Positions 8,280 to 61,651 of a stretch of 64,000 nucleotides of DNA are shown piece by piece. The notes beneath the pieces are model-generated. The model was not told the DNA's origin. It was given only the letters and a program-made list of their open reading frames with translations, and did not search any database. Position 1 is the first letter of the stretch. Every line of letters starts with the position of its first letter. The stretch lies in IMG/VR virus record IMGVR_UViG_3300006931_000029, positions 124,001 through 188,000 of that record; one strand, 5' to 3'. The position numbers and the translations under genes are program-made.

Positions 8280-8579
8280 ATGGTCGAGCTCTTCTTCAAA
8301 GCCACGTGGATTCCGGACATCAAGAAATTCCACGTCCAGTTCAAATGCAAAGGTCACACTCACGTTGAGATGATGGAGCAAGACCGTTACTTTGCGTTCT
8401 GTGATTCGCTCGATGACAGATTGGAAGTAGCTGGATGGAAGATCGAATTTCTACCTCACGGCAACAACGACCCGATTTTCACTGACAAAATCGTGGTTGC
8501 CTTGAGACAGTATTTTCGGGACATCCGCCGAAGCTACGAACTGTCGCTGCAGGGTAGTCCAACAATTTTTCATCTCTAA
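8280..8579 (+). CDS. hypothetical protein
   Basis: Probable start MVELFF at 8280, 1 nt after the upstream stop. Confidence 0.6.
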   Translation: MVELFFKATWIPDIKKFHVQFKCKGHTHVEMMEQDRYFAFCDSLDDRLEVAGWKIEFLPHGNNDPIFTDKIVVALRQYFRDIRRSYELSLQGSPTIFHL

Positions 8580-8580
8580 C

Positions 8581-8656
8581 GCTTCGATAGCTCAACTGGT
8601 AGAGCAGGGTTCTCTAAAAACCTTGGTTGTGGGTTCGATTCCCATTCGAAGCGCCA
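8581..8656 (+). tRNA. amber suppressor tRNA (anticodon CUA), tRNA-Trp-like body
   Basis: 76-nt cloverleaf: GCTTCGA/TCGAAGC acceptor, GCTC/GAGC D stem, GGGTT/AACCT stem with loop CT-CTA-AA (anticodon 8614-8616), GTGGG-TTCGATT-CCCAT T arm, G73, encoded CCA. Confidence 0.93.
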
Positions 8657-8666
8657 TATTTAGTCC

Positions 8667-8924
8667 ATGTCGGACGAACGCAAACTAGTCTCTGTCGATG
8701 AGATTGCCAAGCTACTTGCTAACGAAAACGGCGACTGGCCGTTTTCCGTCGAAGGTGACCAAGTCGAACTCGTCATCGAGAGCAACGTTTACACTCTTTC
8801 GAAAGAAGAATTCAGTCAACTCCAGGACGCGGCGAAGACGGTCAGTTGGAGAGAGTATTCGAACGGCGAACAGGTGGAGTCTGAAACTCCAGAAGCCCTG
8901 GTCGACCGGCTGCTAGACAGTTAA
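8667..8924 (+). CDS. acidic hypothetical protein with C-terminal PxxLVDxLL tag
   Basis: 85 aa ending ETPEALVDRLLDS. Confidence 0.7.
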   Translation: MSDERKLVSVDEIAKLLANENGDWPFSVEGDQVELVIESNVYTLSKEEFSQLQDAAKTVSWREYSNGEQVESETPEALVDRLLDS

Positions 8925-8992
8925 CAGCAGGCAAATAAGTTTTTTACTTTCTCGTTTACAATCGCGAGAAAAAGTATCCATGCTTGACTGTC

Positions 8993-9307
8993 ATGGATAA
9001 AACCTTCTTCCTATTCGATAGAAAAGAAATCGAGGGTTGGAAAGTACGCCTAGCGATGCTATGCCAATCCTGCCCTGTTCACGGTCGACACCCAGACTTT
9101 TGTCCTCTCCTCGAGCTTTCAAAATTAAAGCCTGGGGACCAGATAGACTTCATCAAAACGCTTCCTGTAGACGCTTTGAGGTACGTCTTGGCTAGACACG
9201 AAGTATGCATGGAAAACGAAGTTGGCAAATCGTTAAAAGACGCGTTAGTTAGTTCAAATGCTGACTCGTACGCGTTCTACGAATCGGTTCAAGTCGCTCG
9301 AGCATAA
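8993..9307 (+). CDS. Cys-containing hypothetical protein
   Basis: MDKTFF...CQSCP...CPLL...RHEVC; ATG lies inside an 8-bp inverted repeat. Confidence 0.65.
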   Translation: MDKTFFLFDRKEIEGWKVRLAMLCQSCPVHGRHPDFCPLLELSKLKPGDQIDFIKTLPVDALRYVLARHEVCMENEVGKSLKDALVSSNADSYAFYESVQVARA

Positions 9308-9467
9308 CCCTTCGAGAGAACAGAGGATTGCCGAGCTAGACCGTTGCACGTTATGGAATTACTGGCTAATCGAAGATGGCGAGCATTCGGCGGTGGATTC
9401 CAACAGAGTCCGAGAAAGGATCAACAGACTGTTGGATGCTAGGCTCTACCTTATGAAAAAGGTTTGA
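9258..9467 (+). CDS. hypothetical protein
   Basis: 69 aa filling the gap; start uncertain. Confidence 0.4.
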   Translation: MLTRTRSTNRFKSLEHNPSREQRIAELDRCTLWNYWLIEDGEHSAVDSNRVRERINRLLDARLYLMKKV

Positions 9468-9539
9468 GTTGAATTTGTTTCACTTTTTTTGTTTACATTG
9501 ACGAAGCCTTAGGCATTGTCGATGACGTTCTACTTCACC

Positions 9540-9803
9540 ATGAAATCCGAAAACTAGGTTCCTACCGTCGCCGATGAGGTGACGTTCCACTTCAACAAGG
9601 CCCATCTCACGGACTCCACGATTCCGATGTGGGTTCTCAAGTTGAAGGGTCAAACCTACTACGTTTCGCACGTTTCGTCCACGGCTCCATGGAGCACCAA
9701 GGAAACGCCTGACAACCCTGCTACCAAGGGTTCTCTCAAGTTCAAGAAGGTCGTGGTCTCAATCCACGACGGTGAAGCGGTCATCGAACCGATTGCCGCA
9801 TGA
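9540..9803 (+). CDS. conserved phage protein with in-frame amber at codon 6
   Basis: ATG AAA TCC GAA AAC TAG GTT... in frame with ORF 9579-9803 (FHFNK...IPMWVLK...PWSTKETPDNP.TKGS); ATG has the GTTCT upstream motif. Confidence 0.7.
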
Positions 9804-9812
9804 ACCAATTTT

Positions 9813-9908
9813 GGCAGAGTCGCCGAACGGTGAGCCGCAAGGCTCTTCAGGCCCGGGTGTCCGGAAGGAGACTCGTCTATGTAGGTTCGAATCCTACCTC
9901 TGCCTCCA
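9813..9908 (+). ncRNA. tRNA-derived RNA (Cys-like body) without an anticodon loop
   Basis: GGCAGAG/CTCTGCC-T-CCA acceptor, GTAGG-TTCGAAT-CCTAC T arm, GCC/GGC D stem with inserted GAGCC-GCAA-GGCTC hairpin, CGGGT/ACTCG stem capped by TCC-GGAA-GGA. Confidence 0.75.
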
Positions 9909-9910
9909 AT

Positions 9911-10041
9911 TTCCCTGTAGCTCAGAAGCTTTGCGAAGTCGCCCGCAGATCACGGGATGACGACGCAAATACCGTCGGCAACGACGAGGTAGAGCGGCCG
10001 GTTCTAACCGGAGTGTCGCTGGTTCAAATCCAGTCAGGGAC
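9911..10041 (+). ncRNA. tRNA-derived RNA (Asn-like body) with 62-nt D-loop insertion
   Basis: TCCCTG/CAGGGA acceptor, GCTC/GAGC D stem, CCGG-TTCTAA-CCGG arm, GCTGG-TTCAAAT-CCAGT T arm; insert at 9926-9987; no encoded CCA. Confidence 0.75.
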
Positions 10042-10050
10042 TTAATTTCC

Positions 10051-10434
10051 ATGAAAGCTGAAAACTAGGTAGATGAAACGCTGAGGCTCTACGTGATCCT
10101 CAGAAACGACGCTGGAATGACGCCCGGCAAGATGGCTAGTCAGGCATCTCATGCGGCGGTTCAAGCGAGCCTGGACTGCCTGGGCAGAGCCCCGGATCGA
10201 TTCAAGCGGTATCAAGACGGAACCTTCGGCACGAAGGTCGTCCTCCACGCTGACGAACTCAAGATGCGCTGGCTCTTTGAGCTGGCGACTGAGCGTCAGA
10301 TTCCCTGCGCCCTGATTGAAGACAGCGGCCATGCCGCGTTTCACGACGGGCGCCCAACCACCACCGCACTCGGCATCGGTCCCATTCAACGGCACGAGAT
10401 GCGAGAGCTGAAGAAACTGGAGCTCGTCAAATGA
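10051..10434 (+). CDS. pth2: peptidyl-tRNA hydrolase, PTH2 family, with in-frame amber at codon 6
   Basis: LRLYVILRNDAGMTPGKMASQASHAA, TKVVL, IEDSG, TTTALGIGP are PTH2 motifs; the only in-frame ATG ahead of the first beta strand is 10051, followed by TAG at 10066-10068. Confidence 0.88.
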
Positions 10435-10440
10435 ACTAGC

Positions 10441-10638
10441 TCACTCTTCATCGGAGTCGAGACCCGCCTTCTTGCGAGCGCACGAAATCGCATAGTCCTT
10501 CATGGACCTGCAACGACCGCCGAAGCTACACCACTTCGTTTCCATAGAATCTCCGCAGCAACAAACGTCATCATCGCAGTCTCGGTAGGCTCTTTCGATC
10601 CGCCGAGCAATCAAAAATCTCTGAACCCGCACTATCAT
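10441..10638 (-). CDS. Cys-rich hypothetical protein
   Basis: DCDDDVCCCGDSM...WCSFGGRC; fills an otherwise empty gap. Confidence 0.45.
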   Translation of the reverse strand: MIVRVQRFLIARRIERAYRDCDDDVCCCGDSMETKWCSFGGRCRSMKDYAISCARKKAGLDSDEE

Positions 10639-11104
10639 GAATCTCACCCAAATCAACGACAGTATCAACGCAGGCATTTACGCCAAGAACTTCAGCTACG
10701 CTTCGCCTTTCTCAAAAGGTGCTTATCTAGAATTTCGATTGCAATGGAAGGAAACCTACGCTCGCATCTCGAAAGCGATCCGTGCCAATAAGGCACTTGA
10801 GAAGGAATTTCAACGGTCACTCGTTGGTCTTTCCAAGTTAACCGCCGAGCAGTCGGCCATCCTCAAGGAGCAAGCAAAATTCGAACTACCGAAGTCCATT
10901 GGCTTCGTGCAAGTCACTGCTCCGAATTCACCAGGATGGTTGCCAACGTCGTGGCGGCTGAAAGCTACGGCACACTTCCTGCTCGTCCTCAACAAACAGA
11001 TGAAAATCGAGGCCGAGAAACAGTATCAGGATTCCCACGCCGTGTCCGGACAACCGGACGCGAACGCCTTACGCCAATCGAGCACGGGTCCCAACTTGTC
11101 GTGA
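10637..11104 (+). CDS. hypothetical protein
   Basis: 155 aa, protein-like composition. Confidence 0.55.
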   Translation: MNLTQINDSINAGIYAKNFSYASPFSKGAYLEFRLQWKETYARISKAIRANKALEKEFQRSLVGLSKLTAEQSAILKEQAKFELPKSIGFVQVTAPNSPGWLPTSWRLKATAHFLLVLNKQMKIEAEKQYQDSHAVSGQPDANALRQSSTGPNLS

Positions 11105-60929: not shown

Positions 60930-61111
60930 GGTAGGAGTTTCTCCACTTCATCTATCCTACCGGCGTCTACGGCGTCTCGAGGAGAGCAACCTAAGTCAGG
61001 ATGGACTGTGAACCACCACCTCATCGAAGGAATCCTCTTGCCCAAATCCAACAGGCGTTGAGCCATACCGTCGTCCATCGGCAGCGTGTTGCTGTTGGTA
61101 TTCGTAACCAC
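60926..61111 (-). CDS. hypothetical protein
   Basis: GTTCT 7 nt upstream; ATGA-coupled. Confidence 0.5.
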   Translation of the reverse strand: MVTNTNSNTLPMDDGMAQRLLDLGKRIPSMRWWFTVHPDLGCSPRDAVDAGRIDEVEKLLP

Positions 61112-61123
61112 GTTCAGAAGAAC

Positions 61124-61390
61124 TTAACCGCCGACGCCTAGCGGCGCGTTGCTTGGCACATTTGTCTTCGGCGCAAGCGTCGCAGAGTTTGCCGTGTCCG
61201 CCGATTGGCCCATAGTACCGTGCTGGTCGATAGCACCGGGGCTTGGAGCAATAGACTTCCGGTTTATCGTGCAAAACTGACAGAACGAAACTGGTATGGG
61301 TGGTGGAAGTGGCATGACCAGCATGGATTGGTCGCAGCGACACTGCAGAATCTTTCCACCATTCAGCAATTTGCGTCCGAAGGGAATCAT
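61124..61390 (-). CDS. hypothetical protein
   Basis: ATG 7 nt after the structured RNA; an alternative frame (60996-61427) is also plausible. Confidence 0.35.
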   Translation of the reverse strand: MIPFGRKLLNGGKILQCRCDQSMLVMPLPPPIPVSFCQFCTINRKSIAPSPGAIDQHGTMGQSADTANSATLAPKTNVPSNAPLGVGG

Positions 61391-61397
61391 AAAACAC

Positions 61398-61651
61398 GCA
61401 CAGCCGATCTAGCTGGTCGACGGGCATTCACCCTCGTTAAGAACACCTGTCATCCCAAACCAGATCGGCTATGCGGCCCGTCACGCACGACGGGTTGTGG
61501 CCCTTTGGTTGCGCCAGTGTGCAGGGTATAGCGATGAGCTGCAGTCTCGTTCGCATCTGCTCCTAAAGCCTGTCCAACCGGGACTTTTATGACTATGACA
61601 GGTTAACCCACCCGTCGATTCGAGGATGAACCGGGTTTCGCTAAACTGTGC
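61398..61651 (-). ncRNA. candidate structured RNA or leader (unrecognised)
   Basis: Terminal GCACAG/CTGTGC pair, nested 8-bp and 9-bp long-range helices, and a crossing 9-bp helix; GTTCT 5 nt upstream. Confidence 0.55.

What the first reader, a model, noticed from the sequence alone, without database searches (positions are those of the whole stretch)
9911..10041. tRNA with a 62-nt multi-hairpin domain inserted in the D-loop and a 6-nt anticodon loop
Seen: the body matches a tRNA-Asn-type layout (TAGCTCAG...GGTAGAGC-G-GCCGG...GTGTC-GCTGGTTCAAATCCAGTCAGGGA). The insert at 9926-9987 folds as GCTT-TGCG-AAGT, CCCG-CAGATCA-CGGG and two mutually exclusive helices, CGACG(9961)/CGTCG(9973) versus CGTCG-GCAA-CGACG(9982), a possible switch. 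The loop TTCTAA can be read as UCU or as a second CUA. It lies in tandem with the previous mimic and 10 nt before the PTH2 ATG. Inference: a tRNA scaffold carrying a structured payload, or a non-canonical D-loop intron.
Basis: partly seen in the sequence, partly recalled or inferred. Interest (0 to 1): 0.75.

Follow-up and report, generated by a model that had tools for sequence, protein, structure and literature searches.

The report
Strain-specific phage tRNA mimic, expanded D-loop
A 225-kb soil phage carries, in one lineage only, a tRNA-shaped gene with two extra hairpins in its D-loop and a shortened anticodon arm; it is most likely an unspliced, non-decoding tRNA mimic, and neither an intron-bearing tRNA nor a switch.

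Summary
Window 9911-10041 has an intact tRNA acceptor stem, D-stem and T-arm. A 62-nt insert sits between G15 and G18, and the anticodon arm is 16 nt with a 6-nt loop.

- The insert folds as two stable hairpins.
- There is no bulge-helix-bulge motif, and the phage has no splicing endonuclease or RNA ligase, so an intron is not supported.
- The element encodes no CCA, whereas 37 of the phage's 38 ARAGORN-called tRNA genes do. It also has a U1·C72 mismatch.
- It is absent from every relative, including one whose PTH2 is identical over the 105 residues compared. It is a ~137-nt insertion flanked by AATTTCC repeats, in a slot that holds other cargo in other relatives.
- All copies are identical and no RNA data exist, so function cannot be tested here.

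Context favours a mimic. The conserved neighbour at 9813-9908 has a covarying GCAA-capped D-loop hairpin and no anticodon loop. A widespread phage tRNA-like family has anticodon arms reduced to tetraloops or 6-nt loops. The phage also encodes Ro60 and Y-RNA-like modules.

Best reading: an unspliced, non-decoding tRNA mimic. An inert relic is nearly as likely.

The parts
9911..10041 (+). tRNA-like element #2 (the finding): a tRNA body with an expanded D-loop and a shortened anticodon arm. No CCA is encoded; TAA stands at 10043-10045 where CCA would be.
   Evidence: ARAGORN calls it after the insert is deleted. The cloverleaf-constrained fold is -52.6 against an MFE of -53.0 kcal/mol. Sequence.
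9926..9987 (+). 62-nt insert in the variable pocket of the D-loop, between G15 and G18
   Evidence: Folds on its own at -26.8 kcal/mol, z=-3.99. No copy elsewhere in the genome, and no match in 50,697 phage records.
9931..9968 (+). Long irregular hairpin of the insert: UUGCG/CGCAA, a 2x2 internal loop (AA/GA), GUCG/UGAC, CCCG/CGGG with a bulged A, and a 7-nt loop CAGAUCA
   Evidence: Pair probabilities 0.85-1.0
9973..9986 (+). GNRA-capped hairpin CGUCG-GCAA-CGACG. In the MFE it extends into UACC/GGUA, which would sequester G18/G19.
   Evidence: Pair probabilities 0.59-0.96; MFE structure
9997..10012 (+). 16-nt anticodon-position arm: G·A, then CCGG/CCGG, with loop UUCUAA. A U-A pair can close the loop to a UCUA tetraloop.
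   Evidence: Stem probability 0.74-0.76 and closing U-A probability 0.65. Arms of the same length occur in 7 of 41 members of a phage tRNA-like family.
10018..10034 (+). Canonical T-arm GCUGG-UUCAAAU-CCAGU
   Evidence: Motif scan; pair probabilities 0.88-0.99
9908..9914 (+). Left copy of the direct repeat AATTTCC flanking the inserted segment
   Evidence: Comparison with L022/L023/L029, which read CCA-TTTCC-ATG
10044..10050 (+). Right copy of the direct repeat AATTTCC, immediately before the PTH2 ATG
9813..9908 (+). tRNA-like element #1. It is conserved in all relatives, encodes CCA, has a GCAA-capped hairpin inserted in its D-loop, and has its anticodon arm replaced by a stem capped with GGAA.
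   Evidence: Rfam tRNA 31.6 bits. Covariation: 98% of cells paired, 8 pairs with compensatory changes, and 3 of 5 pairs compensatory in the D-loop hairpin.
9489..9499 (+). Phage promoter-like motif TTGTTTACATT upstream of the small gene. It is the likely start of the transcript that carries both mimics and PTH2 (inferred).
   Evidence: 12 matches in the window against 1.44 expected, 0 of 100 shuffles as high. No sigma-70-like promoter or + strand terminator in 8400-10700.
9540..9803 (+). Small conserved gene of unknown function with an in-frame TAG at codon 6 (9555-9557)
   Evidence: The TAG is conserved in L017, L018 and the other relatives, and in Rhizobium phage RHph_I1_18.
10051..10434 (+). 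PTH2 peptidyl-tRNA hydrolase gene with an in-frame TAG at codon 6 (10066-10068)
   Evidence: Pfam PF01981, E=2e-17. Translation. The TAG is conserved in relatives.
8581..8656 (+). Amber suppressor tRNA (anticodon CUA) with encoded CCA
   Evidence: ARAGORN and Rfam, 65.8 bits

Best explanation
This is a recently acquired, lineage-specific tRNA-derived gene. Its product is a non-decoding tRNA mimic that keeps its 62-nt D-loop domain in the mature RNA.

Shown:
- The acceptor/T-arm minihelix, the D-stem and the universal core nucleotides (U8, A14, G15, G18, G19, A21, C48 and the T-loop) are intact.
- The insert sits exactly in the length-variable pocket of the D-loop and forms two stable hairpins.
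- The anticodon arm is a 16-nt capped stem.
- The element is a ~137-nt insertion flanked by AATTTCC repeats, in a slot that varies between relatives.

Inferred:
- It is transcribed from the TTGTTTACATT motif at 9489, together with the amber-gated small gene, mimic #1 and PTH2.
- It is cut out by RNase P at its 5' end and by a host 3' endonuclease. The 3' cut would also create the near-leaderless 5' end of the PTH2 mRNA.
- It is neither spliced nor used on the ribosome. It acts, if at all, as a tRNA look-alike for tRNA-binding enzymes, host tRNA-targeting defences or the phage's Ro60 system, with the hairpins displayed at the elbow.
For: Anatomy:
- ARAGORN calls a tRNA after the insert is deleted.
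- The cloverleaf fold is within 0.4 kcal/mol of the MFE, and the insert hairpins have probability of about 1.
- The insert's fold has z=-3.99 against shuffles.

Precedent in the same operon: mimic #1 carries a D-loop GCAA hairpin with 3 of 5 compensatory pairs and has no anticodon loop.

Precedent in the same clade:
- The tRNA-like gene at genome c[61476-61549] has a 6-nt loop. Its orthologues in L033 and L034 carry GUAA and UUCG tetraloops at that position.
- A family of 41 distinct sequences from IMG/VR shows strong covariation, with arms of 12-23 nt and loops of 3-9 nt.

Other context:
- The phage encodes Ro60 plus 8 candidate Y-RNA-like modules, some with tRNA-like payloads.
- tRNA mimicry by bacterial and phage Y RNAs is established (PMC4201824).
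- No splicing machinery or BHB motif was found.
- The promoter-like motif is enriched in the window.
Against: - There is no conservation. The element is absent from all relatives and all copies are identical, so neither selection nor covariation can be shown.
- There is no RNA evidence, because all sequencing runs that could be classified are DNA metagenomes and none is shown to be RNA.
- CCA is not encoded, whereas 37 of the phage's 38 ARAGORN-called tRNA genes encode it. The phage also has no CCA-adding enzyme.
- The U1·C72 mismatch, missing CCA, short loop and insertion together are also what a decaying gene would look like.
- The MFE pairs G18/G19 with the insert and pairs the D-stem 5' strand locally (AGCU/AGCU, P up to 0.89; D-stem P=0.08).
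- It is not a sequence-level member of the conserved mimic family: 28 bits, against 59.8 for a true member and 34 for an ordinary tRNA-Asn.
Confidence: 0.45

Rival explanations
1. Inert relic. A tRNA gene cassette landed in the variable slot by microhomology-mediated recombination and is decaying. It has lost CCA, gained a 1:72 mismatch, lost one anticodon-loop base and picked up a 62-nt insertion. It may still be transcribed and cut by RNase P, but it does nothing.
For: - It is absent from all relatives, including L022/L023/L029, whose PTH2 is identical over the 105 residues compared.
- It is flanked by AATTTCC direct repeats.
- Four separate departures from a working tRNA sit in one gene.
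- The same slot holds unrelated cargo in L017, L024 and L025.
Against: - All tertiary-core nucleotides and both D-stem strands are intact, and the insertion falls precisely in the tolerated D-loop pocket.
- The insert is unusually well folded (z=-3.99) and has a GNRA cap like the conserved D-loop hairpin of mimic #1.
- Short anticodon arms are a maintained trait of this clade's mimics, not a defect.
- The identical sequence persists in samples from 2017 to 2025.
Confidence: 0.33
2. Cis-acting punctuation element. Its only role is as an RNase P / 3'-endonuclease site that separates the upstream RNAs from the PTH2 mRNA and sets that mRNA's short leader and stability.
For: - In every relative a tRNA-like structure ends 5-10 nt before the PTH2 ATG, and no Shine-Dalgarno sequence is visible.
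- No internal promoter or terminator was found.
Against: - Mimic #1 already provides this arrangement in relatives that lack element #2, so #2 would be redundant.
- This reading does not explain the 62-nt domain.
Confidence: 0.1
3. Pre-tRNA with an excisable D-loop intron. After splicing it would act as a second amber suppressor (CUA), as tRNA-Arg(UCU), or as a quadruplet UAGA reader with an 8-nt loop.
For: - Deleting the insert restores a cloverleaf that ARAGORN calls.
- The loop UUCUAA contains CUA, preceded by U and followed by A.
- Two amber-containing genes flank the element.
Against: - No BHB motif lies at the junctions.
- The phage has no EndA, RtcB or RNA ligase, and EndA was found only in archaeal control genomes.
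- 62 nt with no Rfam ribozyme or intron match.
- 6-nt loop, no CCA, and a 1:72 mismatch.
- A normal suppressor tRNA is already present at 8581-8656.
- The local amber sites are UAGG, not UAGA.
- N-terminal TAG is not enriched genome-wide: 33 TAG, 30 TAA, 71 TGA.
Confidence: 0.05
4. Conformational RNA switch: mutually exclusive helices in the insert toggle the tRNA-like fold.
For: Complementary pentamers CGACG (9961) and CGUCG (9973) do exist in the sequence.
Against: - The alternative helix has ensemble probability 0.00, whereas the competing helices have 0.96-1.0.
- No riboswitch family matched.
Confidence: 0.03

Closest known systems
YrlA-type bacterial and phage Y RNAs (tRNA-mimicking partners of Ro60/Rsr; Chen et al. 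2014, PMC4201824)
   Same: Both are non-decoding RNAs that combine a tRNA-like T-arm/D-arm core with an extra structured module. D. radiodurans Yrn1 even has a 6-nt 'anticodon loop'. This phage encodes Ro60 and has candidate Y-like modules in its tRNA cluster.
   Different: - In YrlA the RNA ends lie in the Ro-binding stem and the 'acceptor' is a closed hairpin. Here the ends are at the acceptor stem and the extra module sits in the D-loop.
- The Ro motif GNCGAAN0-1G is not matched exactly; the insert has UGCGAAG.
- The element lies about 80 kb from the Ro gene.
- The Rfam YrlA model does not hit it.
Neighbouring conserved mimic #1 (window 9813-9908)
   Same: Same operon and same strand. Both have a tRNA acceptor stem and T-arm, a GCAA-capped hairpin inserted in the D-loop, and no 7-nt anticodon loop.
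   Different: - #1 is conserved with compensatory changes in all relatives, encodes CCA and has a perfect 7-bp acceptor stem.
- Its insert is one 14-nt hairpin placed after G18/G19.
- #2 is a singleton without CCA, and its two-hairpin 62-nt insert lies before G18/G19.
Phage tRNA-like family with D-loop AGNGAAA and a hypervariable anticodon arm (alignment A1; genome c[61476-61549])
   Same: A 16-nt anticodon arm with a 6-nt or 4-nt loop, a GUAGCUCAG...GAGC D-stem, and a GGUUCAA T-loop. A few members also lack CCA.
   Different: - The D-loop sequence and length differ.
- The family HMM gives 28 bits, against 59.8 for a true member and 34 for an ordinary tRNA-Asn.
- No family member has a D-loop insert.
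Archaeal pre-tRNAs with non-canonical introns, including D-loop positions (for example Aeropyrum pernix, PMC3241643)
   Same: Extra sequence interrupts the D-loop of an otherwise normal tRNA gene.
   Different: Those introns are defined by a bulge-helix-bulge motif cut by EndA and joined by RtcB. None of these is present here. The tmRNA, the bacterial Ro homologues and the relationship to a Rhizobium phage all point to a bacterial host.
Phage tRNAs with altered anticodon loops that escape host anticodon nucleases (van den Berg et al. 2023, PMC10264068)
   Same: Phage-encoded tRNA genes whose anticodon loops depart from the host's, in a translation-related conflict setting.
   Different: By that paper's title and abstract, those are decoding tRNAs with altered anticodon loops (the paper was not read here). 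This element lacks a usable anticodon loop and CCA.

Membership tests
Canonical tRNA (Rfam RF00005) | Scores above the family's gathering threshold as a cloverleaf | tested here: not met
   No RF00005 match over 9911-10041, even at E<=10. ARAGORN calls it only after about 62 nt are deleted.
Canonical tRNA (Rfam RF00005) | 7-nt anticodon loop with U33 and a readable triplet | tested here: not met
   The loop is UUCUAA (6 nt). ARAGORN reports a two-base anticodon. The loop closes to a tetraloop with P=0.65.
Canonical tRNA (Rfam RF00005) | 7-bp acceptor stem and a 3' CCA (encoded or added), allowing aminoacylation | tested here: inconclusive
   The stem is 6 bp plus a U1·C72 mismatch, and TAA stands in place of CCA. 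The phage has no CCA-adding enzyme. Addition by the host and charging cannot be tested in silico.
BHB-intron pre-tRNA (archaeal/eukaryal type) | Bulge-helix-bulge motif spanning both exon-intron junctions | tested here: not met
   An exhaustive scan found no 3-4-3 motif with flanking helices at junctions that would restore a D-loop. The only candidate near them (9925/9987) has no outer helix and two G·U pairs.
BHB-intron pre-tRNA (archaeal/eukaryal type) | Splicing endonuclease (EndA) and RNA ligase available | tested here: not met
   PF01974, PF01139 and PF09414 are all absent from the phage. EndA was found only in archaeal control genomes. The host genome could not be tested.
Group I intron in a tRNA gene | Intron of >200 nt with a P1-P9 core, inserted in the anticodon loop | tested here: not met
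   The insert is 62 nt, lies in the D-loop, and has no Rfam intron or ribozyme hit at E<=10.
YrlA / Y RNA | 5' and 3' ends pair into a stem carrying the Ro-binding motif GNCGAAN0-1G | tested here: not met
   The ends form a tRNA acceptor stem. The nearest string is UGCGAAG inside the insert, which is not an exact match (motif from PMC4201824).
YrlA / Y RNA | Encoded within about 4 kb of the Ro60 gene on the same strand | tested here: not met
   Ro60 lies at genome 52.4-54.0 kb on the minus strand. The element lies at 133.9 kb on the plus strand.
YrlA / Y RNA | tRNA-like T and D arms with tertiary-pair nucleotides | tested here: met
   The T-arm, D-stem, U8, A14, G15/C48 and G18/G19 are all present.
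Phage AGNGAAA-D-loop tRNA-like family (A1) | Conserved D-arm GUAGCUCAG-N-GAAAGAGC and an AGGUCGGUGGUUCAAGUCC T region | tested here: not met
   The D-loop is replaced by the 62-nt insert plus AGGUA. The HMM gives 28 bits, against 59.8 for a member and 34 for a tRNA-Asn. The covariance model R1 aligns only 9983-10045.
Phage AGNGAAA-D-loop tRNA-like family (A1) | Anticodon arm of non-canonical length with a capped or short loop | tested here: met
   The arm is 16 nt, as in 7 of 41 family members.

The most novel reading that the evidence does not exclude
The element is a natural 'tRNA scaffold'. The tRNA body would provide processing by RNase P, stability and entry into tRNA-handling pathways. 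The two-hairpin domain displayed at the elbow would be a functional payload: a binding site or decoy for a host defence protein, a tRNA-modifying enzyme, or the phage's own Ro60. On this reading it would be part of a phage toolkit of anticodon-less tRNA mimics. That toolkit is linked here to an amber-gated PTH2 module, and the slot after mimic #1 would be a swap site for such payloads.
Probability: 0.2. Interest if true: 0.75.

Novelty: new variant of a known kind. Interest (0 to 1): 0.45.

Why it matters
If the RNA is made and stable, it would be the first bacterial-virus tRNA-shaped RNA known to me with a large folded domain grafted into the D-loop. That would be nature's version of the engineered tRNA scaffold. 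It would add to evidence that large soil phages field several kinds of non-decoding tRNA mimics alongside Ro60 and Y-like RNAs.

If it is a relic, it still marks an insertion hotspot next to a conserved mimic and an amber-gated peptidyl-tRNA hydrolase. It would also be a caution against reading every interrupted tRNA gene as an intron-bearing one.

Tried and rejected
Searches for homologues:
- A D-loop-insert pattern search in IMG/VR returned 11 hits, all tandem, truncated or interrupted tRNA genes and none a homologue.
- An anticodon-arm pattern found nothing in IMG/VR or JGI metagenomes.
- blastn against 50,697 phage records matched only the post-insert tRNA half.
- The insert has no second copy in the genome.
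- The closest paralogue in the genome shows only generic tRNA similarity.
- Terminase-anchored relatives (L003, L004) have no tRNAs nearby.

RNA evidence:
- Two run searches and one read-laying gave only metagenome contigs (DNA where the kind is known), identical in sequence and with no joints. Expression and splicing are therefore untested.

Structural ideas rejected:
- BHB intron.
- The switch and the GCUU/AAGU hairpin.
- Any known ribozyme or riboswitch.
- An alternative cloverleaf using the CAGAUCA hairpin as the anticodon arm. By inspection it has A at position 33, its stem is about 13 bp, and the remaining sequence does not fit.

Family membership:
- The covariance model built from the conserved mimic family behaves as a generic tRNA model and cannot bridge the insert.
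- The family HMM does not place the element in the family.

Genetic code:
- Genome-wide TAG recoding is rejected, because N-terminal TAG is no commoner than TAA.
- The Y-like motif [CT]AGTGA..TTACTTC is not present in the element.

Full report
**What the window is**

The window is bases 124,001-188,000 of a 224,954-bp IMG/VR phage record with direct terminal repeats and 53.5% G+C. The phage was found in rhizosphere and soil metagenomes.

On the opposite strand it carries a cluster of 36 tRNA genes plus a tmRNA gene at 54-63 kb. Inside the window it has a separate amber suppressor tRNA(CUA) at 8581-8656.

**Checking the observation**

The sequence at 9911-10041 contains every part of a tRNA except a normal D-loop and a normal anticodon loop. 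The parts, in order:
- UUCCCUG, the acceptor 5' strand
- U8 and A9
- GCUC, the D-stem 5' strand
- A14 and G15
- 62 extra bases (9926-9987)
- G18, G19, U, A
- GAGC, the D-stem 3' strand
- G26
- GCCGG-UUCUAA-CCGGA, the anticodon-position arm
- GUGUC, the variable loop
- GCUGG-UUCAAAU-CCAGU, the T-arm
- CAGGGAC, the acceptor 3' strand

Neither ARAGORN nor the Rfam tRNA model reports the intact element, even at E<=10. When the extra bases are removed, ARAGORN calls a tRNA with a two-base 'anticodon', meaning a 6-nt loop. This held for more than 70 choices of deletion boundary.

Three details need correcting:
- Position 1:72 is a U·C mismatch, so the acceptor stem has six pairs.
- CCA is not encoded. 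TAA stands in its place, whereas 37 of the 38 ARAGORN-called tRNA genes of this phage encode CCA, including mimic #1.
- The 'Asn-type' label is weak. The only exact match to the 3' half among one genome per GTDB species is a tRNA-Arg(CCU). blastn hits in phages are to Arg, Trp and Met tRNAs.

**The insert**

On its own the insert folds at -26.8 kcal/mol (z=-3.99; none of 200 shuffles as good). In the full element two hairpins dominate the ensemble:
- A long irregular hairpin at 9931-9968, made of UUGCG/CGCAA, GUCG/UGAC and CCCG/CGGG around the loop CAGAUCA.
- CGUCG-GCAA-CGACG at 9973-9986.

There is no thermodynamic basis for a switch.

Forcing the cloverleaf costs only 0.4 kcal/mol (-52.6 against -53.0). 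The unconstrained ensemble, however, prefers a local AGCU/AGCU pairing over the D-stem, and it pairs GGUA with UACC of the insert. Whether the elbow forms is therefore open.

**Is the insert an intron?**

- An exhaustive scan for a bulge-helix-bulge motif found none at junctions that would restore a D-loop.
- The phage has no splicing endonuclease, no RtcB, no RNA ligase and no CCA-adding enzyme. The endonuclease family was found only in archaeal control genomes.
- No Rfam ribozyme, intron or riboswitch matches the region.
- The intron reading is not supported.

**Comparative evidence**

Relatives were reached through PTH2 homologues and through a pattern taken from the neighbouring mimic.

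- Every relative keeps the order: small gene, mimic #1, PTH2.
- Element #2 occurs only in this phage and in identical copies from other samples (L020, L021, L028; contigs of two more runs).
- L022, L023 and L029, whose PTH2 is identical over the 105 residues compared, read ...CUCUGCCUCCA-TTTCC-ATG. The window reads CCA-ATTTCC-[CTGTAGC...CAGGGACTT-AATTTCC]-ATG. Element #2 is therefore a ~137-nt insertion bounded by AATTTCC direct repeats.
- The more distant 229-kb phage (L018, L019) also lacks it, so gain in this lineage is the simpler history.
- The same slot holds a 51-codon ORF in L017, a DUF6165 gene in L024, and an unrelated ~90-nt hairpin with an 11-bp closing stem in L025. It is a cargo hotspot.
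- Because all copies of #2 are identical, neither selection nor covariation can be assessed.

**No expression data**

The runs holding the sequence are metagenomes: DNA where the kind is known, unclassified for two of the four laid, and none shown to be RNA. Their contigs match the window without joints.

**Why I still favour a mimic slightly over junk**

First, the neighbour at 9813-9908 is a bona fide conserved structured RNA. Across seven distinct sequences, 98% of cells pair and eight pairs show compensatory changes (0 of 500 shuffles reach the covariation score). Its D-loop carries a GCAA-capped hairpin in which three of five pairs covary. Its anticodon arm is a stem capped by GGAA. Structured D-loop expansions and loss of the anticodon loop are thus maintained features in this very operon.

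Second, the phage's tRNA cluster holds another '6-nt-loop tRNA' at genome c[61476-61549]. Its orthologues in two relatives have GUAA and UUCG tetraloops at that position.

Third, a pattern from that gene recovers 45 IMG/VR contigs, giving 41 distinct sequences together with the three clade members. Their acceptor, anticodon-position and T stems covary strongly: 96.7% paired, 239 double-change cells, 0 of 500 shuffles as high. Their arms range from 12 to 23 nt with loops of 3 to 9 nt, and seven have the same 16-nt arm as element #2. A 6-nt loop in this setting is therefore a trait of non-decoding mimics, not a decoding oddity.

Element #2 is not a sequence-level member of that family. The family HMM gives it 28 bits, against 59.8 for a true member and 34 for an ordinary tRNA-Asn. 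The covariance model aligns only the part after the insert.

Fourth, the phage encodes a Ro60 orthologue next to the tRNA cluster. It also has eight copies of a three-way-junction motif, some wrapped around tRNA-like payloads. These look like Y-RNA-like modules of the kind known to mimic tRNA (PMC4201824).

**Likely expression context (inferred)**

- A phage-specific motif, TTGTTTACAWT, is enriched in the window: 12 matches against 1.44 expected. One copy lies at 9489, ahead of the small gene.
- No sigma-70-type promoter or + strand terminator lies between 8400 and 10700.
- The small gene, both mimics and PTH2 are therefore probably one transcript. RNase P cleavage and 3' cleavage of the tRNA-like units would also release a PTH2 mRNA with a leader of about 10 nt.
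- Both flanking genes carry an in-frame TAG at codon 6, conserved in all relatives (codon 7 for PTH2 in L017) and always in the context TAGG. The small gene's homologue in Rhizobium phage RHph_I1_18 also has TAG at codon 6, there followed by A.
- N-terminal TAG is not enriched genome-wide. These look like amber-gated genes served by the suppressor tRNA at 8581, not by element #2.

**Verdict**

- The 'scaffold with payload' reading is compatible with the evidence.
- The 'intron', 'switch' and 'decoder' readings are not supported.
- Best explanation: an unspliced, non-decoding tRNA mimic acquired recently (0.45).
- An inert decaying cassette is close behind (0.33).
- The finding is a new variant of a known kind. 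As a singleton it is modestly interesting. Its genomic context is more remarkable than the element itself.

Noticed in passing
window 9555-9557 and 10066-10068; tRNA at 8581-8656; L016:3960-4206; L017, L018, L022, L024, L025: The small 87-aa gene has an in-frame TAG at codon 6, and PTH2 has one at codon 6 (codon 7 in L017). In this clade the context is always TAGG and the site is conserved in every relative. The small gene's homologue in Rhizobium phage RHph_I1_18 also has TAG at codon 6 and is unannotated there. An amber suppressor tRNA is always nearby. N-terminal TAG is not enriched genome-wide (33 TAG, 30 TAA, 71 TGA), so this looks like amber-gating of two specific genes and not code 15.
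   Followed up: partly
window 9813-9908: tRNA-like element #1 is a conserved structured RNA. It has 8 compensatory pairs, a covarying GCAA hairpin in its D-loop, and a GGAA-capped stem in place of the anticodon arm. It encodes U73-CCA.
   Followed up: yes
between mimic #1 and PTH2: window 9909-10050; L017:3392-3560; L024:2554-2990; L025:2879-2975: This slot is a cargo hotspot. It is empty in L018 and L022. It holds a 51-codon ORF in L017, a DUF6165 gene in L024, and an unrelated ~90-nt RNA-like hairpin with the 11-bp closing stem GCAAGGTGCGG/CCGCACCTTGC in L025.
   Followed up: partly
genome G000:C1 54.3-61.5 kb, minus strand (L026); also L033, L034, L035: Most clustered tRNAs have G at T-loop position 55 (GGUGCRA) together with AG in place of G18G19 in the D-loop. 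The few with GG keep UUC. In this phage the counts are 26 AG+G55 against 7 GG+U55, and three relatives show the same pattern. This looks like clade-wide covariation of the elbow tertiary pair.
   Followed up: partly
genome G000:C1 about 52.4-54.0 kb, minus strand (L032:889-2451): The phage encodes a Ro60/Rsr orthologue (TROVE domain) directly downstream of the tRNA cluster. Relatives have it too. The nearest cellular homologues (about 52-54% identity) are from Opitutaceae (Verrucomicrobiota), which hints at the host.
   Followed up: partly
genome G000:C1 59.77-61.31 kb, minus strand (L026); L033, L034, L035: Eight copies of the motif P1-[CU]AGUGA..loop..GGUUACUUC-payload-(G)ACUUUUCUC-P1', with covarying P1, have no Rfam match. 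Some stand alone between tRNAs, one wraps the 'tRNA-Asn(att)' call, and some are permuted and embedded at the anticodon-arm position of tRNA-like genes with P1 capped by GCAA. Relatives have 5-8 copies each. They are candidate Y-RNA-like modules for the phage Ro60.
   Followed up: partly
genome c[61476-61549]; L033:3640-3709; L034:3744-3815; L036-L080: A widespread phage tRNA-like family gave 41 distinct sequences, 38 of them from 45 IMG/VR contigs of up to 433 kb. It has the D-arm GUAGCUCAG-N-GAAAGAGC (by construction of the search pattern) and the near-invariant AGGUCGG-GGUUCAA. Its stems covary strongly, and its anticodon arm is hypervariable (12-23 nt; tetraloops, triloops and 6-nt loops).
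   Followed up: partly
L026:2536-2749, minus strand (genome 56335-56548): A partial match to bacterial RNase P RNA class A (46.9 bits, E=3e-12, below the gathering score of 100) lies next to tRNA-Ser. It may be a reduced phage RNase P RNA.
   Followed up: no
genome 60084-60494 and about 61090-61165, minus strand: The first stretch may hold a circularly permuted tRNA-like gene (T-arm, acceptor 3' strand, CCA, then acceptor 5' strand, D-arm and anticodon arm) flanked by the Y-like motif halves. The second holds an atypical tRNA-Ala(UGC) with G3·U70 and an odd D-arm that ARAGORN misses.
   Followed up: no
window 8013, 8952, 9489, 29037, 36282, 39276, 43196 and others: The motif TTGTTTACAWT occurs 12 times against 1.44 expected, upstream of genes on the coding strand. 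It is a probable phage promoter element and is also present in L017.
   Followed up: partly
L013:3925-4025 and L014:5258-5358 (unrelated viral contigs): These contigs contain mini tRNA-like units that lack the whole anticodon arm (GCCTCAGTAGCTCAGGTCGCAAGTTCAAGTCTTGTCTGGGGC), immediately upstream of a normal tRNA.
   Followed up: no
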